Shown: piece by piece, positions 3,668 to 51,998 of the stretch
Position numbering within the stretch: position 1 is the first letter of the stretch
Layout of the letters: every line of letters starts with the position of its first letter
IMG/VR virus record: IMGVR_UViG_3300036715_004471
Coordinates: 382,542-446,541 of that record
DNA: 64,000 bases
Strand: one strand, 5' to 3'
The notes under the pieces: generated by a model
Databases searched by the model: none
Told to the model about the DNA's origin: nothing
Seen by the model: the letters and a program-made list of their open reading frames with translations, nothing else
Made by a program: the position numbers and the translations under genes

Positions 3668-4711
3668 TCAACTAAAAACTAAAAACTTCTTAATGTCAAA
3701 GAGTTTAGTATCTTCGGCTTCAAATGGGTAAAGATTCAAACGCTCCGAATTATATGCAACTTCGTTTTCCAGATATGTTGCAGATGGCTTGGCGTAATTT
3801 TTATCCATTGGCATGTGACCAGTGTATTGAAGAAGTTTGTGTTTTATTTCTTTCTGTGCTTTCTCACGTAGGAAAGTGACGATACTTGATAGGTCAACGT
3901 CCACATGACCAACCTTTTCAATATAAGGATGAGATTTTTTGACATCAAACTTGTAATTTGATTCTGGTTTTAACATTGTGTCAATGTTTTCTTCCAGAGA
4001 ACCATATCTTACTCCATAGAAAAGCATAGATTTTTTAACTGGTTTTTTCTCAAATTCAAAAGTAGCATCTTTTCTATTGTAGTATGGAGTTTTGTCTTTG
4101 AGACTAAAAAGTGTAGTATTTACATATCCCAAAAAGATTGCTTTATTTTTCTTTCTGTCTTGATAAATTCCACCAACTTCTAATTTTTTCTTTCCAACAG
4201 GTTTAACATCTTTGTTTTCTTCAAACTCCATAATTAATCTATGTAGCTCAGATCCAATTCTTATTAGGCTTATGCGGCTTCCGATTTTTGCCCAAATGAA
4301 TTCTCCTTGTAAAACTCCACCTGGAGCGATACCAACTTGTAACATGGTATCCATCAAAACATCTCCCGGCAAGTCTACGTAATATTTATCGATCAAGGCT
4401 TTGAAAGTTTTTCCCCTATATCCAGCAGAAATAACTCTAATATTTGAAATTGGTTTATTTTCCATTTCAACAGTTATTGGAACAGCTTGACCATTCCATC
4501 CGCTTGCTGTCTTTTTAATTTTCGTAAGACTTTTTACGTTCGTATCAGTAACCCACACTGGCAATACTTTTTCTTTTTCGTATTTGCTTATATGTTTCTT
4601 TTCATCATATGAATATTCACTATCCCAAGAAGAACCCACTAATACTTCGCTCTCCTTAGTATAAGTATAAGTAATCTTTTCGGGAATACTTCCAACTACA
4701 ACTTTTGTCAT
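3668..4711 (-). CDS. hypothetical protein
   Basis: 347-aa ORF, operon-like spacing. Confidence 0.75.
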   Translation of the reverse strand: MTKVVVGSIPEKITYTYTKESEVLVGSSWDSEYSYDEKKHISKYEKEKVLPVWVTDTNVKSLTKIKKTASGWNGQAVPITVEMENKPISNIRVISAGYRGKTFKALIDKYYVDLPGDVLMDTMLQVGIAPGGVLQGEFIWAKIGSRISLIRIGSELHRLIMEFEENKDVKPVGKKKLEVGGIYQDRKKNKAIFLGYVNTTLFSLKDKTPYYNRKDATFEFEKKPVKKSMLFYGVRYGSLEENIDTMLKPESNYKFDVKKSHPYIEKVGHVDVDLSSIVTFLREKAQKEIKHKLLQYTGHMPMDKNYAKPSATYLENEVAYNSERLNLYPFEAEDTKLFDIKKFLVFS

Positions 4712-4809
4712 AAACTTTCACCTTGAAAATGAAAAAGGTGAGTGACACTTGGTTCACTCACCTTTAGGTTAGATGTAGCTACACTTAGCTACTTGATGGG
4801 ATGACTGCC

Positions 4810-5745
4810 TCAAAATCTAGTAAAGACTGACTCTGAAACAGCGCGTTTTACTCTTTTGTTTTGAGCCGGAACCCTTGGAGTGCTTTTAATATCCATAATC
4901 TTAAATTCTTTGTCACCTGGGAAACCGGATGGATGAGCGTCTTTAGGAGATTGTTCCTTCAACTTAGCAACAAGTTCATCCCACCAAAGATATCTTACTC
5001 TAATAGATTCTGCAAATTTTGGCTTGATCAAGCCGGTTACATACATAATCTTTTGATCAATGTGTTCGCCTGCGCCCACAGAAACTAAACTTTCCAAACT
5101 TCTATTATCAGATGAGTTATTGCAATTTACTGAAACAGAATCTGTATAACAAAGACTCAAACTTTGAGGTTCAATCACGCCTTTTGTTAAGGACTTAGAT
5201 CTGGATCTACGAAAATCACCTTTAGGTGTACCTAAAGAATTATAACTTCCAGAATATCCAGAGCTTATGCCACCGCTACCAATTGTGCCAGAACCACCAG
5301 ACCAATCTCCTCCAAAAGAAAAATCAAATCTAATTGGCTCTACATGACCTTCTTCATATACAGCAGCAGCAATAATTCCACGATGGCTTAAATCTCCATG
5401 GGTATGCAAAGCAACGCTTTTATCAGCGCTAGTAAATACAAATCCAGCCCCACCATTATTTGTTTCTGGCCAAGCTTTCAATGATAAAGTACCGTATCCG
5501 TTGACAAGCCACATTCCACTTTCTAAATCAGTAGAAGCTGGCTTACCAGTTAAAACATCGGTACCATCAATAGATAGTTTGACTTGAACTTTGGCGGAGG
5601 AATTGTTTTTAAATCTAAGCTCGAACGGCTCGTTGCCCCATGCACCCACAGTTTGAATATCATCAATAAGATGTTTCTTCAACGATCTGTTGACAAACTG
5701 TGGGTGATGACTAATGATATCTAACGAATATTTTGAGTATGACAT
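4810..5745 (-). CDS. hypothetical protein with Gly/Ser-rich linker
   Basis: 311-aa ORF with GGAG RBS. Confidence 0.75.
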   Translation of the reverse strand: MSYSKYSLDIISHHPQFVNRSLKKHLIDDIQTVGAWGNEPFELRFKNNSSAKVQVKLSIDGTDVLTGKPASTDLESGMWLVNGYGTLSLKAWPETNNGGAGFVFTSADKSVALHTHGDLSHRGIIAAAVYEEGHVEPIRFDFSFGGDWSGGSGTIGSGGISSGYSGSYNSLGTPKGDFRRSRSKSLTKGVIEPQSLSLCYTDSVSVNCNNSSDNRSLESLVSVGAGEHIDQKIMYVTGLIKPKFAESIRVRYLWWDELVAKLKEQSPKDAHPSGFPGDKEFKIMDIKSTPRVPAQNKRVKRAVSESVFTRF

Positions 5746-5845
5746 ATAATCTCCTGCGGAGTGAAATTAAACTCCGCAATTATATATATCATATCTTTCA
5801 TAGAATTATCGTTTTTTATCAATAATTTCTTTTTGAAGCGTGAAA

Positions 5846-7000
5846 TTAGTATTCACTATCTTCTTCATCTTGGGCGTCATAAGCATCAGGTTTTTCATGA
5901 ACAACTACTTCATGTTTTCTAGATTCTGGATTCCAGCCATGTTCTCTAGCAACAGAATAGATTTCTGCCAATGTAAACGGCTTATCTTCCTCAATTGAAA
6001 AGATAGTATCAGCCACATTAGCAAGACCAGGAACCAATTTGTTGAATATAAATTGTGATTTGGAAGCGCTCAATGCTCCAACCTTGATATCTTTGCTTAA
6101 TCTGCCGGGGCGCATGATTGCGGCTTCCATTTCCAATTTCTGAGCGTTGGTTGTGGCAATAATACGTAAATCCAACATCGAACCAAGAATACCATCTCCC
6201 AAATTCAACAAAGATTGAATTGAGTTAATATTCTCATTACCCCTAGTTACCAATACTTTATCAGCATCTTCTAAGACCAAAATGATTGGTCCGGATGCAT
6301 GATGCCTATTATCAATCAATAGCGGTAACAGTTCTGGTCCACCCAATGAAGAAACCATCTCTGGTGGAACCAAAACGAACATAGCATCTGGAACCTCCAA
6401 AAGCATCGCTCTTACTAAATGGGTCTTACCAGTACCGGGCTCACCTTCCATGATTACGATTCTTCCAGAAGGTTGATTGGAATTCAAATCTTTGATAACG
6501 AAATCATAATCTTTGATAACTTCATCACTGTAATTATCTCTAACTAATCGTATGCTTGCGTTACCCAATGAGCTAAGAGAAAGATTACCATATTGTTTGG
6601 TAATTGCGAAGACATGCCCTTTTTTCTTCTCTGGAACAATTAAAGGAGCAACAAAATCTCTAATTGTTTCAACTAGTTTTTGATCCTTTGAGGCGGCAGC
6701 AACAGTTACATAGGAACCAGACAAACCATATTCCGCCATGCCGTCCTTCCAAATCCAAACCAAAGATTCCGGTTTACCAATGAAATTATAGACAAGTCTT
6801 CCACCAAGAGCCGTCATTTTTGCCTTAATGGATTCCAGATTATCTGAATCTACATTTCCGTAAATGTAACACTCAGATATATGCCCACTATCGTTTTCCA
6901 ACACATTTCTCAGAAGTGTAGACATGCCCAAAGCATTGACGCTAATTTCTGGTTTGCGACCAAGTTCAATCCAATTCATACCATTTCTCCAGATACTCAT
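5846..7000 (-). CDS. AAA+ ATPase
   Basis: Walker A GEPGTGKT, Walker B LVLEDAD, sensor TTN, RPGR arginine finger. Confidence 0.9.
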   Translation of the reverse strand: MSIWRNGMNWIELGRKPEISVNALGMSTLLRNVLENDSGHISECYIYGNVDSDNLESIKAKMTALGGRLVYNFIGKPESLVWIWKDGMAEYGLSGSYVTVAAASKDQKLVETIRDFVAPLIVPEKKKGHVFAITKQYGNLSLSSLGNASIRLVRDNYSDEVIKDYDFVIKDLNSNQPSGRIVIMEGEPGTGKTHLVRAMLLEVPDAMFVLVPPEMVSSLGGPELLPLLIDNRHHASGPIILVLEDADKVLVTRGNENINSIQSLLNLGDGILGSMLDLRIIATTNAQKLEMEAAIMRPGRLSKDIKVGALSASKSQFIFNKLVPGLANVADTIFSIEEDKPFTLAEIYSVAREHGWNPESRKHEVVVHEKPDAYDAQDEEDSEY

Positions 7001-7008: not shown

Positions 7009-7623
7009 TCATGCTAATCTGTTAAAGAGTGCTTCATTATCCTTACAATGTTCTTTCAACTTATCTAGCCAAGCTTGGCTTTTAATCTTGAACATAATAG
7101 GCATATTAGTTTTTTTATCATTAGTGCCCTTACACACTACACCCTCCATAGTCATACCAGGAAGAGTGGACTGCTTAACGGCATCAAACAATTCTACGCT
7201 TACTTGTCCTTCGTAAAGGACTCGTGGGATATCCAAATGACTAAACAATTTTAGAAATTCATCTGGTGTTAAGATTCCTTGTTTATATGGATTGACATCA
7301 ATTAAAGTAACATCCATTTTTTCTTCAAAGTTATGTGAGCCCGCAAAGGAGCTTGGTCCCCAATATTCAAAAAAGCACAAAGCATCAGACCACTTATTGT
7401 CTTTGAATACTTTAGAAAGACTTTCTGAATATTTCTCTTGAATTAAAGTAATGGCTCCATTAAAAGGACTTGTGCGATCAATCAATTCGGTACGAGAACC
7501 AAACTTATAAAAACCCTTTTTGGAGTTCCACTCGGCTCTCATATTAGAGCCATCTAGCTTATCAAAAGCATAGATGTAAACATCTTTTCTGACGTCTTTG
7601 GTAATAGACGGATACATTTTCAT
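7009..7623 (-). CDS. ATP-dependent RNA ligase-like nucleotidyltransferase domain
   Basis: Motif I DKLDGSN, FFEYWG, EGVVCK, FKIK. Confidence 0.75.
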   Translation of the reverse strand: MKMYPSITKDVRKDVYIYAFDKLDGSNMRAEWNSKKGFYKFGSRTELIDRTSPFNGAITLIQEKYSESLSKVFKDNKWSDALCFFEYWGPSSFAGSHNFEEKMDVTLIDVNPYKQGILTPDEFLKLFSHLDIPRVLYEGQVSVELFDAVKQSTLPGMTMEGVVCKGTNDKKTNMPIMFKIKSQAWLDKLKEHCKDNEALFNRLA

Positions 7624-8228
7624 AAAAATACTTTCAATGTATGAGGAATAAATCTAACCCATTTCGTATGATTATATTGTTTAGTTGGCTTATGTTCTTC
7701 ACAACAACACCATTCAGTAAACTCATCATAATAATATTTTGTATACAAAGCTTTGTTAGGACAATCTTTATCGAGATTACACAAACCATTCATATAGGCT
7801 TGATGATCGCCACCGGTATTTAACCAAATACTATATTCATAAGATTTTTGATCTCTGTCCCAGCCAACTTCTTTCACACAATCTCCATTGAGATTAAGGT
7901 TATAAACCTCTGGTTTTATCTTGCAAGATACGAATAATTTTCTCAAACATTCTTCGCAAAGAGAAAAAACATATGCATTCAGATCGAGTAGATGAATTGA
8001 ATCATATCCACCAATTACTTTGGCTTTATGTAAACCAAATGGTATTTGATCATTGTATCCTTCCGGATGACACATGCCGCCGCCGCACAAATTACATAAT
8101 ATGGTTAATGGATTTTGAACTTGAAGTGAATTTGCACAATGGGTACAAACATGTTTATTGCGAGTGTCTTCGCTCCAATGGTCACAACTTTTGCAAACAA
8201 CAAAATCTTCGATTACTTCATTCGACAT
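7620..8228 (-). CDS. Cys-rich hypothetical protein
   Basis: Multiple CxxC pairs. Confidence 0.65.
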   Translation of the reverse strand: MSNEVIEDFVVCKSCDHWSEDTRNKHVCTHCANSLQVQNPLTILCNLCGGGMCHPEGYNDQIPFGLHKAKVIGGYDSIHLLDLNAYVFSLCEECLRKLFVSCKIKPEVYNLNLNGDCVKEVGWDRDQKSYEYSIWLNTGGDHQAYMNGLCNLDKDCPNKALYTKYYYDEFTEWCCCEEHKPTKQYNHTKWVRFIPHTLKVFL

Positions 8229-10958: not shown

Positions 10959-11315
10959 TTAGTTGATTGATACCACTACTGCGGCACCAACATCTGATAC
11001 GTGGGAGGCTCTATTATCCGTTAGATAACGAGATAATGTTTCCACCGGATTCTCTGGTAGAGGATTCTCTACAATGAATTTTTCTGCTAACTCTCTCAAA
11101 GCTACAGTTAAGTCCGGATTATGAACCGAACAAACTACTTCCTTCTCACCAGAAACCCAACGAACAATAGAAACGTAATACGTTTCACGTGCGCGAGATA
11201 ACCAAGCAACAGTTAGTCCTGGCGCAGTACCATCAGATTGGTACGCGAAGTTAATAGCCTTGGTGATCTTATCAATTAACGTTTGTGTGTCCATTTTACT
11301 TATCTCTCCATTCAA
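10959..11315 (-). CDS. hypothetical protein
   Basis: ORF coupled to tsf. Confidence 0.6.
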   Translation of the reverse strand: MNGEISKMDTQTLIDKITKAINFAYQSDGTAPGLTVAWLSRARETYYVSIVRWVSGEKEVVCSVHNPDLTVALRELAEKFIVENPLPENPVETLSRYLTDNRASHVSDVGAAVVVSIN

Positions 11316-12300
11316 AATTTGAATTATTTAAAACGCCTTTTTCAAAATTTGGATCTGGCGTAGCAGGAACACCTGACAACTTAGCAACTTCATCAGAGAA
11401 ATTGCCTTTAGTTTGCTGTTCTATTCCTTCACCAACTTGACAACGAATGAAATTCACAATCTCAATCTTGCCACCTAATTGAGCTGCATATTGTGTGTCA
11501 ATAAGTTGCTCTATACTTTTCTTAGGAACCACTACTGATTCCTGTTTAGTCAAACAAACCTCAGTATACCATTTATTAAGCTTGCCTTCAATAATTCTAG
11601 CCCATTGTACTTGAGGTTTTCCAAGCCCTTCTACTTGAGCTTGAAAAATATCTTTTTGTCGATTAAGCACATCTTCTGGTAACTTATCTGGTGATATTGC
11701 TATCGGATTCATTGCCACAATTTGCATTGCTAAATCGTAACCAATTTGTGCAAATGCTTCTGAATTAGCAATTTCTACAGATGGAGCTTTCAATGTAACT
11801 ATTGAAGCTAGTTTATCAGCAGGATGATGTACATATCCAAACACGCGACACGTGTCGTCGATGGGCTCCTCGATCCACCAACGATTGAATACGCATTTTT
11901 CTTTAACTTTAGCAGACAATTCTGTTTGTGCCGTAAGCGCCTCACCATTTGTTAATTTATCGAATGGTAATCCCACCACATGAACTGCGGCAATACTAAA
12001 CCACACTTCTTCCGCGAACCCTCTAAATTCCGGGCTTCTAGCTACAAAATCAGTTTCACAATTTACTTCTAACATCAAAACAGCTTTACTACCAACTGGT
12101 AATTGTACAGGTCCCGCCAATACAATACCTTCAGCGGCGATTTTACCCTCTCTACCAGAAACAATATTCTGTCCCTTGGTTTTGATAATATCAACGGCTT
12201 TTTGTAGATCATCGCCCGCCTCTTTCAAAGCATCATTACAATCTTTCATACCAGCTTGGGTAAGGGCGCGTAATTCTTTTAATAATTCTGATTTATTCAT
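11296..12300 (-). CDS. tsf: translation elongation factor Ts
   Basis: KELRALTQAGMKDC, AAEG, EVNCETDFVA, LAMQIVAMNP, IIEGKL, FIRCQVGEGI. Confidence 0.95.
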   Translation of the reverse strand: MNKSELLKELRALTQAGMKDCNDALKEAGDDLQKAVDIIKTKGQNIVSGREGKIAAEGIVLAGPVQLPVGSKAVLMLEVNCETDFVARSPEFRGFAEEVWFSIAAVHVVGLPFDKLTNGEALTAQTELSAKVKEKCVFNRWWIEEPIDDTCRVFGYVHHPADKLASIVTLKAPSVEIANSEAFAQIGYDLAMQIVAMNPIAISPDKLPEDVLNRQKDIFQAQVEGLGKPQVQWARIIEGKLNKWYTEVCLTKQESVVVPKKSIEQLIDTQYAAQLGGKIEIVNFIRCQVGEGIEQQTKGNFSDEVAKLSGVPATPDPNFEKGVLNNSNFEWRDK

Positions 12301-14538: not shown

Positions 14539-15480
14539 ATGCCTACTTTAAATCCGCCAAAATGTTTCAATTCAACTATGTCATCAAAACCTGGCACCGG
14601 ACCAGTACTAGTAAACAATGTTAACTATCCAGTAAATAGTATGTATACAAATAATACATATTTATGGGATGGCACTAATTGGTCAACAACATCTAGTAAT
14701 GTTATTGATGCATCCGGACCGCTTCCTACAAGACAAAATAGTTGTTCTTCTGAGTTTTTTGGTGCTTCTGGCACAAATCATAATACTGTAATGGTATTTG
14801 GTGGTCAAAGCAGCTCTTCTTTATTAAGAGACACATGGGTATTTGATGGGACTAGTTGGACAAACCCAACACAATCCGGGTCTCCTAGTGCAAGGTACTC
14901 AGCAGCTATGTCATGTGGTTTTTCCGCATTATCAAAAGTTTTGTTATTTGGTGGAAAAAATGAACATGATGTTTTGGGTGACACTTGGTTATGGGATGGA
15001 CATACTAATACATGGGCACAAAAAACACTTGACGTATCACCATCTGCCAGATATGGAGCCAAATTAGTGGGCGGAATTTCTGCTGGAAGAAACTCTATAT
15101 TATTTGGAGGCGCTAATAATTTTGAGCTTTTAAATGATACATTTAGATGGAATGATGCCGCAGAAACTTGGGTAAAATTAACCCCTACGCACTCACCATC
15201 AGCAAGATTTGACCATGTTATGGGAAAAGATGCCGCAAATAGTAACGTTATTGTATTATTTGGCGGATTAAATCAAGACTCTGTACTTTCAGATACATGG
15301 GTTTTTAATGGTACTGATTGGACACAACAGTCTCCCGCAAGTTCTCCATCTGCACGTTATGGCGCTCATATGAGTTATGATGTCACTTCAGGGGCATTAA
15401 TATTATTTGGTGGCACAAATGGATCCACAGTATTTAATGATACTTGGAAATGGACCGGCACAAATTGGGTTCAACTATAA
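14539..15480 (+). CDS. Kelch-repeat beta-propeller protein
   Basis: Repeated SPSAR....LFGG....DTW.WDG..W units. Confidence 0.9.
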   Translation: MPTLNPPKCFNSTMSSKPGTGPVLVNNVNYPVNSMYTNNTYLWDGTNWSTTSSNVIDASGPLPTRQNSCSSEFFGASGTNHNTVMVFGGQSSSSLLRDTWVFDGTSWTNPTQSGSPSARYSAAMSCGFSALSKVLLFGGKNEHDVLGDTWLWDGHTNTWAQKTLDVSPSARYGAKLVGGISAGRNSILFGGANNFELLNDTFRWNDAAETWVKLTPTHSPSARFDHVMGKDAANSNVIVLFGGLNQDSVLSDTWVFNGTDWTQQSPASSPSARYGAHMSYDVTSGALILFGGTNGSTVFNDTWKWTGTNWVQL

Positions 15481-16344: not shown

Positions 16345-17229
16345 TTAAAGATGTTTCATTATAATACTATAGAATTCCTCTAGGTTAACGTGATCAGGAA
16401 GTCCTGCCGAACCACCATCATTCACTTCAATGACCCACCATTTATCATCTTCAGCTTGAACAATATCCAAAGCCACAAATGGACTCTTGATTCTTTTACC
16501 AATTTCAATCAACCAACTCATTGGAGGAAATTCTACATTCTCAGGATAAACAGCATCATTGCCCCAATAAGGAGTAGTAAATACTGGCGTTCCTTTTACA
16601 AAGAAAGTTCTAAACTCTACTGGTAAGGGCATTCTGCTTTTTGGATGAAGCCCAATCTTTTTCAAAGAAAGAAAATCTCGACAAACTAATCCGCCGTAGA
16701 AGTCTCTACCCTGTAACTTAAAGAAGTTGCTCATGACACGTAACGACTCTTTTTGATCAGATGCGTCTCTAATGAAACACGCGTCATACCATTCATGTTT
16801 ACGGCTTTTCAAGTAATCTTTAATCAAGATTGATTTGTCATTAAATTCTTCTGCAATCTTCTTAGAAATGGCTGGAAGACCGGCATTTGCAATATCATCA
16901 GCCGGAATAATCATTGAATATGGAGTGTATTCTTTCAGTTCTACGTACCATTCTGGAAAATTATAAGACCACATATAGTCTTGATAAGAGTTAACCAACT
17001 CCGCGCCCAAACTATCCATCTCTTGGTAAACGGAAGGTTTAACAATCCATCCTCGATAAAGAGTAGGAGTTTGTTTATTGAAAATAGACATTGGGGATCC
17101 GAAATGACTTTCACTTAGAATACTCACACCAAACCCAACGGATCCGGCAGCTCCCGCTTCGTTCTGCCAAAAACTGTCTACTTGGCGCGGAGAACTAAGA
17201 TTAGTAGGGAATAAGATATTCATTTTCAC
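16345..17229 (-). CDS. ATP-grasp domain protein (DUF4343/R2K-like)
   Basis: LYRGW, IKDYLKSRKHEW, EFRTF, FVALD, VIEVNDG. Confidence 0.8.
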   Translation of the reverse strand: MKMNILFPTNLSSPRQVDSFWQNEAGAAGSVGFGVSILSESHFGSPMSIFNKQTPTLYRGWIVKPSVYQEMDSLGAELVNSYQDYMWSYNFPEWYVELKEYTPYSMIIPADDIANAGLPAISKKIAEEFNDKSILIKDYLKSRKHEWYDACFIRDASDQKESLRVMSNFFKLQGRDFYGGLVCRDFLSLKKIGLHPKSRMPLPVEFRTFFVKGTPVFTTPYWGNDAVYPENVEFPPMSWLIEIGKRIKSPFVALDIVQAEDDKWWVIEVNDGGSAGLPDHVNLEEFYSIIMKHL

Positions 17230-17888: not shown

Positions 17889-18119
17889 TCACCAAAACAC
17901 TTTGTTTTTGATTAACTTATCACAGAATACAATTACTCTCTTCAATTTTTCATCAAGAGAATCCAATTTATCTATTCCTTCCCAACATACCCCATTTTCG
18001 GATAAAGGAAATCTAAATAACCTTCTGCCACGAGAAAAAGAATTAACATCCCAAATGGCAACAGAGAATTTGGCTACTACAACCAAATACCCTTCCACTT
18101 CGTATTCTTTATTATCCAC
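17889..18119 (-). CDS. small protein with C-terminal ..NKVFW motif
   Basis: ORF in operon; shared C-terminus. Confidence 0.65.
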   Translation of the reverse strand: MDNKEYEVEGYLVVVAKFSVAIWDVNSFSRGRRLFRFPLSENGVCWEGIDKLDSLDEKLKRVIVFCDKLIKNKVFW

Positions 18120-18855
18120 GCGCCACTGTCCCTTCCATACAATCTAATACAGAATCAGGATCGCACTGATAAATACCAGATGCCCAAATAGGATTAGTTT
18201 CAATTACTGCCCAACCTTTGTTGGGAATAATTCCTACATCAATCACACACCCGGGCACAGGATCAATCTCCTTGAGAAGATTGTTAACGAATTCATCTGG
18301 TCTAATGTGATCGCCAGGAATCATATATTGATATCGAGGATCATTTATCTCCCCAAAGAACAGATAATTCGACCAAGTTTTAACTCGATTGTCTTTAACA
18401 AAGCATCTATATTCTACGTCCCATTGAACCACGTCTGATACCAAAACTGGACAATCATCCGCAATTAATTCATTGGGCTGAAACTCACCGGCTTCATAAA
18501 CTTTGGCATCGAAACATTTATCATCTGCTGGTTTGATAAATTTCTTGACATTGATTTTCTTAGCGTCAGCCAAGGTCATGAAATCTACCCGACGCTTAAG
18601 ATAATGACGAGGTACTTTAGTCAACCAATCAAATGAATTTTGATGAAGCTTCCATCCCATTTGCTGAGCGATAACTTCACAAAAGATTTGCGAACCATAT
18701 GGAATTCCAACTTGATGAGTTTGAATCAATTCATCATCCAAACGCCAGCCACCTGGTGCAGGAATAACTTCCCACCCCTTTTCTCTGGCAGACATTTGTA
18801 AAGCAATAATCTCATTGTGAGACGTGCCCACACGCGGCTGAGTAATGAATAACAT
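18112..18855 (-). CDS. ATP-grasp domain protein (DUF4343-like)
   Basis: FIKPADDKCF, EYRCF, VIDVG, WAVIETN. Confidence 0.8.
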   Translation of the reverse strand: MLFITQPRVGTSHNEIIALQMSAREKGWEVIPAPGGWRLDDELIQTHQVGIPYGSQIFCEVIAQQMGWKLHQNSFDWLTKVPRHYLKRRVDFMTLADAKKINVKKFIKPADDKCFDAKVYEAGEFQPNELIADDCPVLVSDVVQWDVEYRCFVKDNRVKTWSNYLFFGEINDPRYQYMIPGDHIRPDEFVNNLLKEIDPVPGCVIDVGIIPNKGWAVIETNPIWASGIYQCDPDSVLDCMEGTVARG

Positions 18856-18864
18856 AATTTTAAA

Positions 18865-19113
18865 TCACCAAAATGCTCTGTTTTTTATAAAACGTTCGCA
18901 GATTTTTTTAATTTGAACGGGTATTTCTTCCCCAAACCAGGTAAAATTACCATCTCGAAAATCCGCAGCCGCCAAATACAACCAATAACTATAGATAGTT
19001 AAAGATTCTTCACCATATTTCCAAACATACACTGTGTGCTTATCATCTGTTAAAATGTGCATGTCGTCTATCTTATAGATATCTTTATCTATTGAATAAA
19101 TAATTGGTTCCAT
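18865..19113 (-). CDS. small protein ending ..NRAFW
   Basis: Paralog of 19135..19389 (YKID..YVWKY..YW.Y.A). Confidence 0.7.
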   Translation of the reverse strand: MEPIIYSIDKDIYKIDDMHILTDDKHTVYVWKYGEESLTIYSYWLYLAAADFRDGNFTWFGEEIPVQIKKICERFIKNRAFW

Positions 19114-19134: not shown

Positions 19135-19389
19135 TTACCAAAATGCTTTATTTGCCAAAGTTCTTGTACAAAATTTTGCCAATTCTAATGGAATAAAACG
19201 TTCCCAATTGTAACCTAATTTACCATTTTTGATTTTGGAACTAGCAACATAAACCCAAAATCCTAACTTATCAGACACAGGATTGTATTTCCAGATGTAT
19301 AATAAGTTAGGACTAAAATCAATTTTGTAATTATCATTACCTATTGAAAGAGAAAGTTGCTTTTTTATTTCTGAGATATTTTTTGACAT
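19135..19389 (-). CDS. small protein ending ..NKAFW
   Basis: Paralog of 18865..19113. Confidence 0.7.
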   Translation of the reverse strand: MSKNISEIKKQLSLSIGNDNYKIDFSPNLLYIWKYNPVSDKLGFWVYVASSKIKNGKLGYNWERFIPLELAKFCTRTLANKAFW

Positions 19390-19904: not shown

Positions 19905-20306
19905 TCACTGAAATACTTTCATTCTCGATAAGCGCGCAGTAAATTTCATCATCTCCAAAAGTACATCTGGAGATACAATTGCGGCACTTCTGGGATCTTT
20001 CTGGAAAAACTCTGTCCAATCCACACCGACAAATCTTTGATCATTCTTAGGATATAAGAGACCAAATGTTTTGTTACGCCCATGAGATTCATACAAATGG
20101 ACTCTTAATTCATTGATTTCATCTGCTGGAACGTCTTGTGGAGCGTAAACGCTAAAAGAAAACATATTCTCAACAGAGAAACAAAATAGAACCCAGCGTT
20201 TTGAATCGAACTCTTTTTCTGCCTGAAAAGGATAAAGCACAACTAATTCTTTTAATAGATTATTTTTGGTGAGGGATCTCACATCATCGAACGTTAGATT
20301 TTTCAT
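19905..20306 (-). CDS. hypothetical protein ending ..RMKVFQ
   Basis: ORF in operon. Confidence 0.65.
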   Translation of the reverse strand: MKNLTFDDVRSLTKNNLLKELVVLYPFQAEKEFDSKRWVLFCFSVENMFSFSVYAPQDVPADEINELRVHLYESHGRNKTFGLLYPKNDQRFVGVDWTEFFQKDPRSAAIVSPDVLLEMMKFTARLSRMKVFQ

Positions 20307-20630: not shown

Positions 20631-21047
20631 TTAAAAATATGATGCCAGACGGCTAAGTCTGGACAAATGTTGCATGATTTTATGTAATTCTCTTAAAGGC
20701 ATTTTAAATATTCTTTGAGATGAATCAAAATATGACATCCATGGTTGTGACAAAAACCAATCGTCTTCAGATAATTGATTTAGTTGAAAATCAAAATCTA
20801 TATTCAAAATCCAAAAACGCACAACTCTTTCTAAAGTATCAGAATATTGTATTTCATATTCATATTCCACTCCACAAATATATGGACCAACCATGAAAAT
20901 CAATACGTTTGATGGCAAATTAACAGATAGATAAAGTTCCAAAAAACTATTGCACTCATCCTCGGAAGGATCTTGTGATAATAGTTTAGGAACTTCATCT
21001 TTTGAAAAACCCAACTCTTCTAAATAATCTAACTTTTTCGGAAACAT
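20631..21047 (-). CDS. hypothetical protein
   Basis: ORF in operon. Confidence 0.6.
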   Translation of the reverse strand: MFPKKLDYLEELGFSKDEVPKLLSQDPSEDECNSFLELYLSVNLPSNVLIFMVGPYICGVEYEYEIQYSDTLERVVRFWILNIDFDFQLNQLSEDDWFLSQPWMSYFDSSQRIFKMPLRELHKIMQHLSRLSRLASYF

Positions 21048-21048: not shown

Positions 21049-21342
21049 TTACCAAAACGCTATTACTTTCTTATAACGAGAACAAATCTCATCTATTTCT
21101 TGATTGAGTTCCTGTAACGTTTCATCTGACATAGATGAGTCGCAGTCAGCGAGTCGAATAACGTAGCAATTTAATGGTTTCTCACAAACCATTGATAATG
21201 ATCTTAGTGATGGTCTAACATAATATAAGCTACTACTGTTAGCATACCAATTGATAAATGTTGATTTCCGCATTATGGGGGATTCATTATATCGCACTAA
21301 TATCTCATAGATTTCAGAAAATATCGTAGACAAAACAGACAT
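21049..21342 (-). CDS. hypothetical protein ending ..VIAFW
   Basis: AAGGTG RBS. Confidence 0.6.
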   Translation of the reverse strand: MSVLSTIFSEIYEILVRYNESPIMRKSTFINWYANSSSLYYVRPSLRSLSMVCEKPLNCYVIRLADCDSSMSDETLQELNQEIDEICSRYKKVIAFW

Positions 21343-26701: not shown

Positions 26702-26971
26702 TCACAAGAATGATTTCAGATTTATCATTCTTAACATACCGGACTCTTTGAGATTTTTTCCGTGAAGTCGGTAAGTTACACTACCATCACGATATTCGTA
26801 AGCAATAACATTATCTACTGGCGGATATCCACTACCATCATGTTCTCCATGAAAATAGATAACAATATTCCCACCTTGACTATGAAGTGTTCTACTTTTT
26901 ATTTCTTTACCATTAGTGGTACAAAAATTCAAAATATCTTTATGAAGAGGATAATTATCTTGAGTGTTCAT
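26702..26971 (-). CDS. small protein ending ..NLKSFL
   Basis: ORF. Confidence 0.6.
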   Translation of the reverse strand: MNTQDNYPLHKDILNFCTTNGKEIKSRTLHSQGGNIVIYFHGEHDGSGYPPVDNVIAYEYRDGSVTYRLHGKNLKESGMLRMINLKSFL

Positions 26972-32211: not shown

Positions 32212-32589
32212 TTATTGAAACGTTAACATAACTTTTAACTTGTTGACGATCTTATTCATATCGCCATCTAAAAAATCAAAAGCTAATGTTGGCAAATCAT
32301 TAAACTCTGAAGTACAAATATATTTATCTTCATTATCATAAACAACAACCAATACATCGTTATTGTTTAGATACTGAGTAATTTCATACTTTTTATGATT
32401 GAAACGAATTCTAATCATTTCCTCATCTCCGGCAATAAAATCATTGCCGAATTTGAATGCGTAATGTGCATTTCCGAACAGCGCACATTTATAGGTGACA
32501 AGCGTACTTGCTTTGAAATCAACCCGCTCTTTCTTCAAAAGAGCCTGGCAGATGGGGCAGCGCTTGGCATCTAAGTTTTTCATAATCAA
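32212..32589 (-). CDS. Zn-binding hypothetical ending ..MLTFQ
   Basis: Paralog of 32586..32987. Confidence 0.65.
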   Translation of the reverse strand: MIMKNLDAKRCPICQALLKKERVDFKASTLVTYKCALFGNAHYAFKFGNDFIAGDEEMIRIRFNHKKYEITQYLNNNDVLVVVYDNEDKYICTSEFNDLPTLAFDFLDGDMNKIVNKLKVMLTFQ

Positions 32590-32987
32590 CTGAATGTAAA
32601 AACAGTTCTTATTCTATTGATTGCTTTGTCAACATTGAATTTTGAAAAGTCAAAAAGTTCTTTGTCGAGGGTAAAAGCATTGTTCTTAAAACTAAAATTG
32701 ACCCTACCCTCCGCATCCACCTTAAAAACCATAATCTCGGTTTTAACAGATGTTGCTGGCGCAGAGTCATATTTCTTAGTCAACCTATACTTATGTTTAT
32801 CATCGTAGATATTAACTATCTCGGAAAACAATTGAGGAATACCAAAATCGTTTCTCATAATTGAGATAACATAATGATCTAGATCGCTAACGCAACCGTA
32901 TCCTGACTTGCGGTCAATCATATCAATCTGACATTGGCAAGTTGGGCATTTGAGACTATTTAATAGTTTCTTTAACAGGGGATCCAT
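32586..32987 (-). CDS. Zn-binding hypothetical ending ..VFTFS
   Basis: CP.CQ..C..HY..KY..T..FDF shared with neighbour. Confidence 0.65.
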   Translation of the reverse strand: MDPLLKKLLNSLKCPTCQCQIDMIDRKSGYGCVSDLDHYVISIMRNDFGIPQLFSEIVNIYDDKHKYRLTKKYDSAPATSVKTEIMVFKVDAEGRVNFSFKNNAFTLDKELFDFSKFNVDKAINRIRTVFTFS

Positions 32988-36404: not shown

Positions 36405-36653
36405 TCAATGGAAAACCCATAAGTTAGAATTCAAAATCTTTTTCAACTCTGCATAAATCTTGTCTATGCAACCACGACAATAATATCCTAAAATACCAGG
36501 TTCAGTGCCACCTGCCCCATATACAGTAATGGTTGCACAAGTTGTACCCTTTTTTATTTTGCCATTTTCTCCAACATATTGAGGATCTTTATCACATTCA
36601 TGATAACGACATTTTTTTCTACCAGACTTATCTACTTCTAGTCCAACTCTCAT
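36405..36653 (-). CDS. PARP-type Zn-finger-like small protein
   Basis: EVDKSGRKKC...C..IKKG..YCRGC. Confidence 0.45.
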   Translation of the reverse strand: MRVGLEVDKSGRKKCRYHECDKDPQYVGENGKIKKGTTCATITVYGAGGTEPGILGYYCRGCIDKIYAELKKILNSNLWVFH

Positions 36654-41234: not shown

Positions 41235-41310
41235 ATCAAAATACGTCAGGAATCGAACCTGAACTGTGGGGTGATTACCCCAATCCTGCCCTTAGACGAC
41301 ATATTTTGAT
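41235..41310 (-). ncRNA. tRNA-like RNA with extended closing stem, 6-nt loop, no CCA
   Basis: ATCAAAATATG/CGTATTTTGAT, TGGGG-TAATCA-CCCCA, TCAGG-TTCGATT-CCTGA. Confidence 0.55.
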
Positions 41311-42809: not shown

Positions 42810-42810
42810 A

Positions 42811-49188: not shown

Positions 49189-49193
49189 ATATA

Positions 49194-50756
49194 TCAGATT
49201 TGAACAGACTCAATGGTTGAGACCCATAGGTCTTTGTTGTTACCAAGTTCAAGGAACTTTGCAATTACATCAAAAACTTGATCACTAAAACCACCTACGT
49301 TAAGGATATTCTCCTTATCGTAAGCTTGAGTAGAGGTATTCGGAGTAAGATCAATACAAACAAGCTTTGCTTTCTTGTTACGAGCTTTGAACTCAGTCCA
49401 AGCTTTCATCGTAGCGGTACCACGACTTCTGCCTGAATCAACCCAAGACTCGTTATCGCTTACATAAATGACTAGATCGCCCATGGCTTTTCTACGATTC
49501 AACTCTTCCATTGGAAGCGAACAGTTAGTGCCACCTCCGCCAAATCCTGCTAGGATCTTGGCGTTAGTCATAATTGAATCCATTGGATTCAGCTTATGAG
49601 CATGAACTCTAGTATCGAATGGTAATACTTCTACATCAGAATTTCTGCGCATAATAGCTGCGGCAACCAGGGCTGCCACATCAATACAACGCATCTTGCT
49701 GGATACATTTCCACGATTTCCGGTGACCGGAGAATTCATGGATCCAGAAGTATCTACCATTACATAAACCTTTTTGTTTTCAAACTCTGGAATGTTCTCC
49801 AACGCATGCTCAGCAGCCTTTTGCAAAGCTACAGAAACCTTAGCAGGAACACTTGCATCCATATTCAAAAACGTAGTGAACAACTGGTACGGGAATACCT
49901 TTGCTCTCTTAACTTGCTCCTTATCCTCCAACTTGGCACAGATAAGCCCTAACAGATCACGATCTGCTAACACATTATGACGAGCAAATGTGTTAAGGTT
50001 CTGTCTAATCTGGTTCCAAGTTGCATTGACTGCAATCTTTTTCCAGTGTTCAGCAGTCAATGGTAAAGCCGTAAGCTTTTGGAAAGGTACATGCGGGATT
50101 TCTTTTGACATATCTTTCTTGAAGTCTTCAAACTGCTTAACTAGAGCACACAAGTCTTCCTTTGCATACTCCTTATCTAGCAAGTACCCAAATATAGCAG
50201 AACGTTGCTTATTGGTTGGCTTCGGATGAACCAACTTGATGATATCTTGCAATGACGGATCATTACCAACATCTGCCGCAAACAACTGCTCATCATTCAA
50301 AGATTCCAAATACTTTTGGATTAATCTTTTAGGGCGAGTACCTAAAGACTTACGTCCAGTAGCCCCTGAACGAATAACCTGCACGAAATTTCTCAACATC
50401 TTTGGAGAATCAACTACCTTATCAAAGATTTTGGACAAAAGCTCGGAGTCCTTTCCAGCAACTACCGCAGCCAAAACCGCAGGCATATCTTTCATTAAAC
50501 CCTCTTGACGAGAGTATACTGCCAAGCGAGCAACGTACTCAGCCGGCAACTTGTTAGCTAACTCTAACACTTTCTTAAGTTGATCTTCATCAGATACATA
50601 ATATGTTCCGTTAAAACAACCAGTCATAGCTAATTGAGCCAATGCGGCTTTGTCAGACAAACTATAAGCTTGTCCACCAGCATTGTTAACTACATTGGTC
50701 GGCTTTACAGCCTTTGAAGACACAAACTTGCTAGCAAATAATTTCTTTGATGACAT
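49194..50756 (-). CDS. rsr: Ro60/Rsr TROVE + vWA RNA-binding protein
   Basis: NNAGGQAY, LAQLAMTG..GTYY, MKDMP, HPKP, VFPYQL, DTSGSM, GGGTNC, VSDNESW, VGGFSD. Confidence 0.93.
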   Translation of the reverse strand: MSSKKLFASKFVSSKAVKPTNVVNNAGGQAYSLSDKAALAQLAMTGCFNGTYYVSDEDQLKKVLELANKLPAEYVARLAVYSRQEGLMKDMPAVLAAVVAGKDSELLSKIFDKVVDSPKMLRNFVQVIRSGATGRKSLGTRPKRLIQKYLESLNDEQLFAADVGNDPSLQDIIKLVHPKPTNKQRSAIFGYLLDKEYAKEDLCALVKQFEDFKKDMSKEIPHVPFQKLTALPLTAEHWKKIAVNATWNQIRQNLNTFARHNVLADRDLLGLICAKLEDKEQVKRAKVFPYQLFTTFLNMDASVPAKVSVALQKAAEHALENIPEFENKKVYVMVDTSGSMNSPVTGNRGNVSSKMRCIDVAALVAAAIMRRNSDVEVLPFDTRVHAHKLNPMDSIMTNAKILAGFGGGGTNCSLPMEELNRRKAMGDLVIYVSDNESWVDSGRSRGTATMKAWTEFKARNKKAKLVCIDLTPNTSTQAYDKENILNVGGFSDQVFDVIAKFLELGNNKDLWVSTIESVQI

Positions 50757-51143
50757 ATGAATAACTCCTTTTGAACAAAAGTTTCAGGAAATAATAACCA
50801 GGATGGTTGAAGATTACAATTCACCAACATCAAGTTTACTATTTATTCTGGAGAATTTTTAATGAAAATAGCTTTCCCCTCGCTATCTCGAATCTACTAT
50901 ATAACCGTCTTAATTTATCTTTTCAATTTTCTAAATAAAAATATTTTCAATCTCGTAAAACTTTAGAATGTGATCCACATGGACATTCTAATACAATTTT
51001 ATCTTCCTGTACCTTTTCTATATCGATGTGCTCGTCGAACTCAACGCTTACTATCATCTGACAATCTTCGCAACGAAACAAAAATTTTCTTAATTCCTTC
51101 ATATCAATATATGTTTTATATGCATTATGTGATATGATTTATC

Positions 51144-51725
51144 ATGACAATCACGCAACAATGTACTAGATGTGGTGTTACAAAATCATCTTTAGAATTT
51201 CTAAAGAATCCATTACATAATGACATTCTATACAAAAATTGTATTTCTTGCACGGAAAAACAAAAGACATATAGAAAAAAACATAAGAACGAATCAAAAA
51301 TAGCAAGACAAACCTATTACAAAAAGAACAAAGAAAAAATAATCAAGATTAGACAAAAACGTTTTGATACGTTAAACGGTAGATTAAAAAACATTTTGTC
51401 AAACATAAAAAACAGATCTAAATTTCATGAATATGATTTGGATATTGATTTTCTTATTTCATTATTCAAATCACAAAATGGTAAATGCGCTTTAACCAAC
51501 ATAGAAATGTCTCTAACAAATAAATCTAATCATAGATCAGATCCATTTGTGGTTTCTGTTGATCGAATTAATCCATCAATAGGATATTTGAAATCTAATG
51601 TTCGACTTGTTTGTACAGTTGTGAACTATGCTCTCAATGAATTTGGAGAAGATGTTTTTCAAACTATTTGTATAGCTTATATCCAACAACTTCAAAAAAA
51701 GAAAATTTCACAGGAAACATTTTAA
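51144..51725 (+). CDS. HNH-like endonuclease
   Basis: QNGKCALT, SVDRINP..GY..SNVRLVC..VN. Confidence 0.8.
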   Translation: MTITQQCTRCGVTKSSLEFLKNPLHNDILYKNCISCTEKQKTYRKKHKNESKIARQTYYKKNKEKIIKIRQKRFDTLNGRLKNILSNIKNRSKFHEYDLDIDFLISLFKSQNGKCALTNIEMSLTNKSNHRSDPFVVSVDRINPSIGYLKSNVRLVCTVVNYALNEFGEDVFQTICIAYIQQLQKKKISQETF

Positions 51726-51998
51726 TTTCGATATTCGTCCATAGAAATTTTCTACTTCATTTTTAATGTCCGAACCAATTTTTGAATGTTTTTTCGTCCA
51801 TTGTGGTATTTGATCTTTAAATACCAAATCAAAAACTTTTTCTTTGTATGAAGAATTGATTATTTGACCACTAGGTATAGTAATCCATGCTTTATGGATT
51901 CCGAAAAATTCTACCCAAAAATCTTTTCCAGAACTCTCATCTTTCAAATAAAATGACAGTCTGTTTTCAAAATTAGAAGAAAGTTGACTAATCTTCAT
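51708..51998 (-). CDS. small protein ending ..KLKCFL
   Basis: ORF. Confidence 0.55.
   Translation of the reverse strand: MKISQLSSNFENRLSFYLKDESSGKDFWVEFFGIHKAWITIPSGQIINSSYKEKVFDLVFKDQIPQWTKKHSKIGSDIKNEVENFYGRISKLKCFL

What the first reader, a model, noticed from the sequence alone, without database searches (positions are those of the whole stretch)
3668..51998. Shared C-terminal ...F-x-stop motif on at least 13 otherwise dissimilar proteins
Seen C-termini: IKKFLVFS (3668), HTLKVFL (7620), LIKNKVFW (17889), FIKNRAFW (18865), LANKAFW (19135), LSRMKVFQ (19905), YKKVIAFW (21049), INLKSFL (26702), LKVMLTFQ (32212), IRTVFTFS (32586), NSNLWVFH (36405), ISKLKCFL (51708), and variant LSRLASYF (20631). 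Most have a basic amphipathic helix ending in a penultimate Phe, while the bodies are mostly unrelated. Inference: a portable C-terminal tag, such as a docking motif for a common hub (the AAA+ ATPase at 5846 is one candidate), a virion-loading signal or a degron.
Basis: partly seen in the sequence, partly recalled or inferred. Interest (0 to 1): 0.75.

Follow-up and report, generated by a model that had tools for sequence, protein, structure and literature searches.

The report
Shared C-terminal tail on phage ORFans
In one clade of about 350-450 kb phages from mats, sediments and lakes, dozens to about a hundred small, mostly unrelated proteins per genome end in the same 16-20-residue basic helix with Phe as the second-to-last residue, which looks like an address or destruction tag whose reader is still unknown.

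Summary
The window lies in a 446,541-bp metagenomic huge phage.

**Enrichment.** Across the genome, Phe is at position -2 in 61 of 658 ORFs (p=3e-8). About 45 proteins share a longer tail: h(-12) h(-11) x [KR](-9) h(-8) x K(-6) L(-5) K(-4) A(-3) F(-2) x(-1), then stop.

**Properties of the tail.**
- It occurs only at C-termini; no internal window matches.
- It is selected at the protein level, since codons at the conserved positions vary synonymously.
- It is better conserved between orthologues than the protein bodies (61% against 37% identity).
- It is never extended or shortened.

**Distribution.** Relatives carry 46, 85 and 11 strict-rule copies. A more distant relative carries none.

**Bodies.** Most bodies are unrelated by sequence: 214 tail proteins fall into 114 families. 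Two AlphaFold models have different secondary-structure make-up. Some tandem paralogue families do exist.

Of the 13 termini, 10 are clear members and 3 are weak.

**The proposed hub.** The AAA+ ATPase at 5846 has no orthologue in the two complete relatives, which carry at least as many tails, so it is not the general reader.

**Best reading.** A tag read in trans through the free C-terminus. The likeliest use is a degron for Clp-type proteolysis, since all tail-bearing genomes encode two tandem ClpP genes. Virion loading is second.

The parts
17889..18119 (-). Tail protein, 76 aa (GTG start), ends LIKNKVFW
   Evidence: PSSM 16.0 in the six-frame scan; sequence read
18865..19113 (-). Tail protein, 82 aa, ends FIKNRAFW; paralogue of 19135
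   Evidence: PSSM 29.5. The body clusters with 19135 and a G001 orthologue that keeps the tail
19135..19389 (-). Tail protein, 84 aa, ends LANKAFW
   Evidence: PSSM 25.2. The G001 orthologue ends ILTNKVFW
19905..20306 (-). Tail protein, 133 aa, ends LSRMKVFQ
   Evidence: PSSM 23.2. Against the G001 orthologue the body is 31% identical and the tail 75%
20631..21047 (-). Tail protein, 138 aa, Tyr(-2) variant, ends LSRLASYF
   Evidence: Fits the rule: R at -9, L at -8, L at -5, Y at -2. A G001 protein with a near-identical tail, LHRLSSLSIFG, has Phe at -2
21049..21342 (-). Tail protein, 97 aa, ends YKKVIAFW
   Evidence: PSSM 27.6. The G001 orthologue ends FYRVKVFW
26702..26971 (-). Tail protein, 89 aa, ends INLKSFL
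   Evidence: PSSM 15.1
32212..32589 (-). Tail protein, 125 aa, type-2 tail, ends LKVMLTFQ
   Evidence: PSSM 26.0. Member of the 59-protein divergent superfamily
32586..32987 (-). Tail protein, 133 aa, type-2 tail, ends IRTVFTFS. It has an N-terminal CxxC..C..H motif, a beta body and a C-terminal helix
   Evidence: PSSM 21.6. Eleven homologues keep the tail; F at -2 and T at -6 are invariant. AlphaFold2 pLDDT 87, helix at residues 119-132
51708..51998 (-). Tail protein, 96 aa, ends ISKLKCFL
   Evidence: PSSM 27.2
3668..4711 (-). Possible minimal tail, 347 aa, ends KKFLVFS
   Evidence: PSSM 2.8, so it fails the full motif. The G004 orthologue, 41% identical, ends QKYLLFS
7620..8228 (-). Possible minimal tail, 202 aa, ends HTLKVFL
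   Evidence: PSSM -7.4. The G004 orthologue ends NNLKVFI
36405..36653 (-). Possible minimal tail, 82 aa, ends NLWVFH
   Evidence: Fails the motif. The G001 and G004 orthologues end NLWVFH and KLWIFK

Best explanation
The tail is a 16-20-residue basic amphipathic helix. Its consensus is h(-12) h(-11) [EN](-10) [KR](-9) [LIYF](-8) x K(-6) L(-5) K(-4) A(-3) F(-2) [LSIWT](-1)-COOH. I read it as a recognition tag that one common partner reads in trans, with the free C-terminus as part of what is read.

It marks a large, fast-evolving repertoire of small, soluble proteins with no known relatives, in one clade of huge phages. Counts by the strict rule are 34, 46, 85 and 11 in four genomes (45, 56, 101 and 12 by rule or PSSM).

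Shown:
- the motif itself and its fixed register to the stop codon;
- selection on the protein rather than the DNA;
- conservation above that of the bodies;
- restriction to one clade;
- bodies that are mostly unrelated.

Inferred: that a partner reads the tail.

My split within this reading:
- About 0.3: a C-terminal degradation tag. The last residues, A-F-x-COOH, would be engaged like the end of the ssrA tag, and the upstream K/R-bearing face like an adaptor site. The proteins would then be fed to Clp-type proteolysis. Every tail-bearing genome encodes two tandem ClpP genes but no recognisable ClpX/ClpA-type partner, so the unfoldase would be the host's or an unrecognised one.
- About 0.2: a signal that loads the proteins into the virion or capsid.
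- About 0.1: docking to some other hub.
For: Register and enrichment:
- Zero of 127,046 internal windows match, against 41-47 C-termini.
- The rule-based enrichment is 45- to 80-fold in three genomes.
- 46 of 51 homologous pairs between genomes keep F/Y at -2 with no change in length. The exceptions are F-to-L changes in the same register, or false positives.

Protein-level selection:
- TTT/TTC is 31/12 at -2, against 64% TTT genome-wide.
- K/R at -9 is written with seven different codons.
- The DNA downstream of the stop is not conserved.

Conservation:
- In 24 orthologue pairs the tail is 61% identical and the body 37% (Wilcoxon p=1.7e-6).
- Control small proteins show the opposite: 34% for the last 16 residues, 57% for the body.
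- Charged positions (-9, -6, -4) are conserved across unrelated bodies. Packing inside one protein would not require that.

Bodies:
- 214 tail proteins fall into 114 families after iterated HMM searches, and 129 families of 200 proteins once 40 residues are removed.
- The two AlphaFold2 models differ: alpha/beta against a beta meander.
- One tail protein's body is homologous to part of a conserved 300-321-aa protein without a tail, which is also present in the tail-less relative.

Clade restriction: G006 has 8/387 Phe at -2 and no motif.

For the degron sub-case:
- Two true ClpP genes sit in tandem in all four tail-bearing genomes.
- Hydrophobic C-termini are generally avoided in bacteria and go with susceptibility to proteolysis (PMC10862746).
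- In the P0013 model the helix ends at -4, leaving A-F-V outside it.
- Only 1% of tail proteins have a transmembrane-like segment, against 12% of all ORFs.
Against: - No partner was identified.
- The tail helix has high pLDDT in both monomer models (78-93). It may therefore be packed on its own body, whereas degrons and docking peptides are usually flexible.
- ClpP is also present, in one copy, in the tail-less G006.
- No ClpX/ClpA-type small domain, MIT domain, proteasome/HslV or DnaN is encoded.
- Tagging up to a fifth of all ORFs (G004) for destruction would be costly.
- Part of the repertoire is made of true paralogues, so shared ancestry explains some of the sharing.
- No tail protein carries a credible known domain, so portability onto known folds is not shown.
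Confidence: 0.55

Rival explanations
1. Virion or capsid loading signal. This is a sub-case of a tag read in trans. The tail would dock small, fast-evolving proteins to the scaffold, coat or portal so that they are packaged and injected with the DNA. It would work like the T4 capsid targeting sequence on internal proteins, or like the basic C-terminal coat-binding helix of phage scaffolding proteins.
For: - A conserved short signal on variable, fast-evolving small proteins is the pattern known for T4 internal proteins (my own knowledge).
- The tail is basic and amphipathic, like scaffold coat-binding helices.
- One tail protein's body is related to a conserved protein encoded next to the terminase and portal genes.
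Against: - 45 to about 100 different cargo proteins would be unprecedented.
- No tail gene lies in the structural module at 167-268 kb. They sit in arrays of small ORFs among tRNA genes.
- No proteomic data exist.
Confidence: 0.2
2. A purely structural element. All tail proteins would descend from one ancestral small fold ending in a beta strand, a loop and a helix. The bodies diverged beyond recognition, and the last helix stayed because it caps the fold. No common partner would exist.
For: - Both models end in strand, loop and helix, with high pLDDT for the helix.
- Tandem arrays and real paralogue families exist, and iterated HMMs merge 59 proteins.
- hhalign links the tandem 106-117-aa genes at 77-80% probability.
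Against: - A structural helix need not end exactly one residue after Phe in about 200 proteins.
- It also need not keep exposed K/R at -9, -6 and -4 across families.
- The tail is the best-conserved part of each protein, while the bodies drift fast.
- The two modelled bodies differ in secondary-structure class and share no fold hits.
- Most bodies show no profile similarity to one another.
Confidence: 0.2
3. A membrane-targeting amphipathic helix of the MinD or FtsA type, which would bring the proteins to the inner membrane.
For: - The tail is a C-terminal, basic, amphipathic helix with aromatic residues.
- The proteins have no transmembrane segments of their own.
Against: - The hydrophobic moment is only slightly above that of other C-termini: 0.33 against 0.28.
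- Lipid binding does not need an invariant Phe at exactly -2 or K/R at exactly -9.
- The helix is modelled confidently rather than left free.
Confidence: 0.07
4. The tail acts as a nascent chain inside the ribosome at termination. The fixed distance to the stop codon would reflect the geometry of the exit tunnel and peptidyl-transferase centre. The phage's own RF2 would be functionally tied to these genes.
For: - An RF2 gene (SPF and GGQ motifs) sits inside the ancestral array of tail genes in all four tail-bearing genomes. No RF2 was found in the 71%-complete G006.
- The clade also encodes IF-1, EF-Ts, a PTH2-like protein (by eye) and 56 tRNAs.
- A fixed register to the stop codon is what arrest peptides show (my own knowledge).
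Against: - The bodies are conserved, folded proteins of 50-210 aa, not leader peptides.
- The stop codon after the tail is not special: TAA 25, TGA 19.
- These genomes are collinear overall, so conserved gene order is weak evidence.
Confidence: 0.05
5. The AAA+ ATPase at window 5846-7000 is the hub that reads the tail.
For: It is a classic-clade AAA+ with an uncharacterised 170-residue N-domain. Two genes with F-x ends flank it.
Against: - It has no orthologue in G001 or G004, which carry at least as many tails.
- The flanking genes do not carry the full motif.
Confidence: 0.03
6. A DNA- or RNA-level signal, such as a promoter, terminator, ribosome-binding site or coupling element, that happens to lie in the last codons.
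For: The genes are tightly packed and several stops overlap the next start.
Against: - Conserved positions are written with many synonymous codons.
- The flanking DNA is not conserved.
- The pattern is kept between genomes of 31-39% GC.
Confidence: 0.01

Closest known systems
ssrA-type and MuA-type C-terminal degrons read by ClpX (my own knowledge; C-terminal tag screen in PMC10862746)
   Same: - A short signal at the extreme C-terminus, where the free carboxylate and the last hydrophobic residues matter.
- It could be bipartite, like the adaptor site plus the LAA end of ssrA.
- The MuA tag, like this tail, is basic and then hydrophobic.
   Different: - The ends differ: A-F-[LSIWT] here, not L-A-A or K-K-A-I.
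- This signal is longer and helical.
- It is encoded in the genes, on 45 to about 100 phage proteins.
- No degradation has been shown.
T4 capsid targeting sequence on internal proteins (my own knowledge)
   Same: One short conserved peptide on otherwise variable, fast-evolving small phage proteins, encoded outside the main structural cluster.
   Different: - The T4 signal is N-terminal and is cut off by the prohead protease; this one is C-terminal.
- T4 has a handful of such proteins, not dozens.
HbYX motif (hydrophobic-Tyr-X-COOH) of proteasome activators (my own knowledge)
   Same: A hydrophobic, aromatic, any-residue tripeptide in fixed register with the free C-terminus. Here it is [AVIT]-F-x, with Tyr in 5% of copies.
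   Different: - It is carried by small proteins with no known relatives, not by ring ATPases.
- It has Phe, not Tyr.
- No proteasome or HslV is encoded in these phages.
ESCRT-III MIM1 helix, (D/E)xxLxxRLxxL(K/R), bound by the MIT domain of Vps4 (my own knowledge)
   Same: The spacing of hydrophobic and basic residues is the same: h(-12), R/K(-9), h(-8), h(-5), K(-4). Both are C-terminal amphipathic helices.
   Different: - No MIT domain is encoded.
- The carriers are not ESCRT-III proteins.
- MIM1 does not need a fixed distance to the C-terminus or a penultimate Phe.
Encapsulin cargo-loading peptides and microcompartment encapsulation peptides (my own knowledge)
   Same: Short terminal peptides that send unrelated cargo proteins to one shell. 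The microcompartment peptides are amphipathic helices of about 18 residues.
   Different: - The sequences differ.
- No shell partner is known here.
- Those systems have a few cargo proteins each.

Membership tests
ClpX-type C-terminal degron (ssrA-like or MuA-like) | The signal lies at the extreme C-terminus in fixed register | tested here: met
   No internal matches; 46/51 homologue pairs keep the register
ClpX-type C-terminal degron (ssrA-like or MuA-like) | The terminal residues are L-A-A or a basic run followed by A-I | tested here: not met
   The consensus end is K-L-K-A-F-[LSIWT]
ClpX-type C-terminal degron (ssrA-like or MuA-like) | The tag causes ATP-dependent degradation | not testable with these tools
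   Two ClpP genes are present, but no ClpX/ClpA-type small domain. No assay was possible.
HbYX motif | Hydrophobic-Tyr-X at the free C-terminus | tested here: inconclusive
   The same register, but Phe in 95% and Tyr in 5% of copies
HbYX motif | A 20S proteasome or HslV-type ring as the receptor | tested here: not met
   PF00227 has no match above its cut-off in any of the five genomes. The host is unknown.
MIM1-MIT (ESCRT-III and Vps4) | LxxRLxxL(K/R) spacing in a C-terminal helix | tested here: met
   h(-12), K/R(-9), h(-8), L(-5), K(-4)
MIM1-MIT (ESCRT-III and Vps4) | A partner with an MIT domain | tested here: not met
   PF04212 has no match above its cut-off. The AAA+ proteins show no MIT domain.
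T4 capsid targeting sequence | An N-terminal peptide removed by the prohead protease | tested here: not met
   The motif is strictly C-terminal
Clamp-binding or PIP-like C-terminal motif | Qxx[LIM]xx[FY][FY] or QL[SD]LF, with a sliding clamp as partner | tested here: not met
   There is no Gln at -8, and position -1 is often not aromatic. No DnaN is encoded.
MinD/FtsA-type membrane-targeting sequence | A strongly amphipathic terminal helix with no need for fixed residues | tested here: inconclusive
   Hydrophobic moment 0.33 against 0.28 for other termini. Invariant F(-2) and K/R(-9) go beyond what lipid binding needs.
One ordinary paralogous protein family | Homology detectable along the whole proteins | tested here: not met
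   - blastp links 2 pairs of 44.
- 114 clusters of 214 proteins remain after iterated HMM searches.
- It is met only for subsets: a 59-member superfamily and the G004 tandem families.
Any Pfam or PHROGs family | A significant profile match | tested here: not met
   None for the 44 G000 tail proteins. The three matches in relatives were false positives of the loose rule.

The most novel reading that the evidence does not exclude
The tail does not act on the finished protein. It acts as a nascent chain in the ribosome at the stop codon, and the RF2 gene embedded in the ancestral tail-gene array is its dedicated counterpart. The phage would then gate the release of dozens of its own proteins through its own termination factor.
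Probability: 0.05. Interest if true: 0.95.

Novelty: new variant of a known kind. Interest (0 to 1): 0.8.

Why it matters
Huge phages are mostly made of small genes with no known relatives and no clue to their function. Here a single tail marks 5-14% of the called ORFs by motif, and in one 448-kb genome a fifth of ORFs have Phe at -2.

- This sorts a large part of the unknown genes into one functional class that shares one reader.
- It gives a direct experimental handle: a 20-residue peptide for pull-downs, reporter fusions and complex screens.
- If the tail is a degron, it would be a phage-encoded programme of timed self-destruction on a scale not described before.
- If it is a loading signal, it would define an injected arsenal comparable to the effector sets of secretion systems.
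- The tail is also a compact tag that could be reused for engineering.

Three full-text searches found no description of it.

Tried and rejected
**Rejected**
- DNA-level signal: ruled out by codon diversity.
- AAA+ at 5846 and the Kelch protein at 14539 as general hubs: both are absent from G001 and G004.
- R2K ATP-grasp next to the tail cluster: present in G001, absent from G004.

**No answer**
- Complex prediction of the conserved YjoB-like AAA+ (G000 301294-302610; PDB 7w42, E=6e-35) with the P0013 tail protein gave no verdict, neither for nor against binding.

**Nothing found**
- Pfam and PHROGs on the tail proteins.
- The NTPase, glycosyltransferase and CHC2 zinc-finger hits among relatives' 'tails'. 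These were chance matches of my loose rule: a Tyr or an atypical end, or a helix that belongs to the known domain.
- Fold searches of both models in PDB and AlphaFold DB by Foldseek.
- VIA-align against 48,161 chains: best Z 5.6 and 3.8.
- ESM Atlas: only weak leads, with scores of 0.77-0.81, to CesT/YbjN-like and beta-rich clusters.
- The two MoxR-like ATPases (345674, 353958) are not Clp unfoldases.
- MIT, proteasome/HslV, DnaN and ClpB_D2-small families: none above cut-off.
- Phyletic profiling left 104 candidate genes shared with G001 and G004 but not found in G006, which is too many to name a reader. The further 40-gene subset also lacking from G005 is not a reader list, because G005 itself carries tails.
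- No homologues of the 82-aa window protein beyond itself.
- No RNA run clearly holds the phage, and laying contigs gave no evidence of expression.

**Failed technically**
- Two full all-against-all hhalign runs timed out. A reduced run over 21 families worked.
Full report
**What the window is.** The window is bases 382,542-446,541 of a single 446,541-bp virus record with 38.7% GC. The record encodes:
- a gpA-type large terminase, a portal protein and a DnaE-type polymerase;
- in the window, EF-Ts, NAMPT, a Kelch propeller, an R2K ATP-grasp enzyme, a Ro-like protein and 38 tRNA genes.

No close relative is in the GenBank phage collection; the best terminase match there is 24% identical. Near-identical DNA is found in microbial-mat, sediment and aquatic metagenomes, with weaker traces in lake-water and wastewater runs. 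IMG/VR holds a clade of relatives.

**The observation.**
- All 13 termini read as reported.
- I built a simple ORF set: longest ORFs of at least 50 aa, chosen greedily, covering 92% of the genome. A C-terminus depends only on the stop codon, so the choice of start codon does not matter.
- In that set Phe is at -2 in 61 of 658 ORFs against 4.3% overall (p=2.8e-8), and Trp at -1 is 2.8-fold enriched. In the window alone, 14 of 125 ORFs have Phe at -2 (p=0.001).
- The Phe termini share a longer pattern. A 16-residue PSSM splits the ORFs cleanly: 41 score 15 bits or more, and the next best scores 6. A six-frame scan finds 47 such stops.
- That matrix was trained on the same data, so I checked it in two independent ways:
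  - A fixed rule (F/Y at -2, hydrophobic at -5 and -8, K/R at -9) hits 34 C-termini where 0.75 are expected from its rate at internal positions.
  - The same matrix and rule were applied to other genomes, as described below.
- No internal window of any protein reaches 15 bits (0 of 127,046). The motif is strictly C-terminal.

**The motif.** Pooled over 165 tails from three genomes, with percentages of copies:

| Position | Residues |
|---|---|
| -16 | E/N/D |
| -13 | K/E |
| -12, -11 | hydrophobic |
| -10 | E/N |
| -9 | K 65, R 35 |
| -8 | L/I/Y/F |
| -6 | K 55 |
| -5 | L 64 |
| -4 | K 53 |
| -3 | A 39 (also V/I/T) |
| -2 | F 95, Y 5 |
| -1 | L 25, S 16, I 15, W 13, T 10 |

- Positions -9, -8, -5 and -2 were fixed by the rule that selected this pool, so only the split among the allowed residues is informative there. 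In the PSSM-derived G000 set, K/R is at -9 in 42 of 44 proteins and Phe at -2 in 43 of 44.
- There are two flavours. Type 1 is [KR]hxxhKAF[WL]. Type 2 is N[KR][IL]KThhxF[SLQ]. Both occur within single paralogue families, so they form a continuum.
- On a helical wheel, positions -12, -8, -5 and -1 form a hydrophobic stripe. F(-2), K/R(-9) and K(-6) lie together beside it. This is my own geometric reading.

**Protein level, not DNA.** Phe at -2 uses TTT 31 times and TTC 12 times, against 64% TTT genome-wide. K/R at -9 uses seven different codons and Ala at -3 uses four. The DNA after the stop is not conserved.

**Other genomes.**

| Genome | Size and status | Phe at -2 | Strict-rule tails |
|---|---|---|---|
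| G001 | 432,844 bp, 32.7% GC, terminase 83% identical | 75/661, p=7e-13 | 46 |
| G004 | 447,763 bp, complete, 31% GC | 146/726 (20%), p=1e-48 | 85; 84 ORFs have PSSM of 8 or more |
| G005 | 353,765 bp, terminase 68% identical | 23/416, p=0.12 | 11, mostly type 2, in one syntenic cluster |
| G006 | 301,007 bp, terminase 44% identical, 71% complete | 8/387 | none |

The tail therefore arose in one clade as a small cluster and expanded to 45 to about 100 genes.

**Conservation.**
- In 24 orthologue pairs between G000 and G001, the last 16 residues are 61% identical and the rest of the protein 37% (p=1.7e-6).
- In 160 small control pairs the pattern is reversed: 34% and 57%.
- Of 51 homologous pairs between genomes, 46 keep F/Y at -2 in the same register. 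The exceptions are F-to-L changes in the same register, or false positives. No tail is extended or truncated.
- Two families collected from public protein sets (7 and 11 members, down to 37% identity) also keep the tail.

**Are the bodies unrelated?** Mostly, but not entirely.
- With the last 20 residues removed, blastp links only 2 pairs among 44 G000 proteins.
- Across four genomes, 214 tail proteins fall into 136 phmmer clusters, and 114 after three rounds of HMM searching. The largest cluster has 59 members: all type-2 proteins plus tandem genes of about 95 aa in G004. With 40 residues removed, 200 proteins still give 129 clusters.
- hhalign among 21 multi-member families links only the tandem 106-117-aa genes, at 77-80% probability.
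- The two AlphaFold2 models differ:
  - The 160-aa family (pLDDT 83) is alpha/beta with a long N-terminal helix.
  - The 133-aa window protein at 32586-32987 (pLDDT 87) has a CxxC..C..H motif and a beta meander.
  - Both end in strand, loop and helix, and the tail helix is modelled confidently.
- Neither model matches a known fold.
- One tail protein (G000 268755-269195) has a body related to part of a conserved, tail-less protein of 300-321 aa, which is also present in G006.
- No tail protein has a credible Pfam or PHROGs match.
- Tail proteins are small (median 113 aa). Only 1% have a transmembrane-like segment, against 12% of all ORFs.
- None lies in the structural module at 167-268 kb.

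**The proposed hub.**
- The AAA+ at 5846-7000 belongs to the classic clade; its AAA core resembles Cdc48 and AFG2.
- It has a paralogue at G000 2136-3350, but no orthologue in G001 or G004.
- The Kelch protein is also absent from both.
- Neither can be the general reader.

**Genes that travel with the tails.** 104 G000 proteins are shared with G001 and G004 but were not found in G006. They include:
- a YjoB-like AAA+;
- two MoxR-like ATPases;
- a PARP-like protein;
- RNA-repair genes;
- IF-1, identified by eye from its sequence;
- RF2.

A complex prediction of the YjoB-like AAA+ with a tail protein gave no verdict. All four tail-bearing genomes carry two tandem true ClpP genes, and G006 carries one. 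No ClpX/ClpA-type small domain, MIT domain, proteasome/HslV or DnaN is encoded.

**Interpretation.**
- These points argue for a tag read in trans through the free C-terminus:
  - the fixed register;
  - the conserved charged face;
  - conservation above that of the bodies;
  - the diversity of the bodies.
- I rank a Clp-directed degron first, for three reasons:
  - The phage carries a ClpP pair.
  - Bacteria generally avoid hydrophobic C-termini because they promote proteolysis (PMC10862746).
  - The last three residues lie outside the helix in one model.
- Virion loading comes second, by analogy with T4 internal proteins.
- The main rival is a structural capping helix in a hyper-divergent family. 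The confident helix placement and the real paralogue families support it. The invariant register and the conserved exposed residues argue against it.
- Membrane targeting, a ribosome-level role tied to RF2, and a DNA-level signal rank lower, for the reasons given with each.

**Novelty.** Three full-text searches found no description of such a tail in large phages. It works like known terminal tags, but it fails the defining sequence or partner features of each one I tested.

Noticed in passing
G000:C1:131157-132305 (L001:5157-6305, minus strand), outside the window: A phage-encoded class-I release factor of RF2 type (PCRF and RF-1 domains, SPF and GGQ motifs). It sits inside the ancestral array of tail genes, and that gene order is kept in G001, G004 and G005. 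No RF2 was found in G006.
   Followed up: partly
G000:C1:15230-15303 and 320811-320884 (complement), outside the window: Two tRNAs with anticodon CTA, that is, amber suppressors (ARAGORN labels them Pyl). Together with RF2 and the rarity of TAG stops (51 of 658), this is the gene set reported for TAG-recoded phages. However, long structural ORFs of up to 2,369 aa are open under table 11, so recoding is not shown. None of the 44 G000 tail genes ends in TAG.
   Followed up: partly
G000:C1:310327-311509 (L132:14327-15509, minus strand): Two tandem ClpP genes that are full-length matches to PF00574 (158-163 bits). They are conserved in G001, G004 and G005; G006 has a single copy. No ClpX/ClpA-type partner is recognisable in any of these genomes.
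   Followed up: partly
window 10764-44059: 38 tRNA genes are scattered among the small ORFs (56 in the whole genome). They include an oddity at 41237-41307 that ARAGORN reads with a two-base anticodon.
   Followed up: no
window 2263-3651, 11296-12300, 14539-15480, 16345-17229, 49194-50756: Cell-like genes: NAMPT, EF-Ts, a Kelch beta-propeller, an R2K-clade ATP-grasp enzyme and a Ro-like RNA-binding protein. The Kelch protein is found in neither G001 nor G004, and the ATP-grasp enzyme is found in G001 only.
   Followed up: partly
L006:7308-8804 (G000 367305-368804), L001:15335-15550 (G000 141335-141550): A PARP-like protein (WGR, PARP regulatory and catalytic domains), and a 71-aa homologue of IF-1 that is 96% identical between G000 and G001. 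The IF-1 identification is by eye, not by a profile search.
   Followed up: no
G004 (L112), about 427,000-433,100: About twenty consecutive genes of 58-127 aa, nearly all ending in the tail. This is a tandem expansion next to the RF2 gene.
   Followed up: partly
G000 154730 (38 codons), 368102 (36 codons), 145327-145491 (54 aa), 269200-385 (61 aa): Very short ORFs that are little more than the tail itself. They could be remnants or minimal members.
   Followed up: no
G000 132302-133021 and orthologues in G001, G004, G005: A family of about 240 aa next to RF2 whose tail has Met or Leu instead of Phe at -2 (for example RLDSWVIMS), in the same register.
   Followed up: no
window 18837-19003: Contigs from two metagenome runs pile up about tenfold here, then continue as unrelated sequence on both sides of about 18851-18891. 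That stretch is the tail-coding end of gene 18865, so other sequences in those samples share it at the DNA level.
   Followed up: no
G000 and G001 records: IMG/VR classes both records of about 440 kb as 'provirus' by their ends. I saw no host flank.
   Followed up: no
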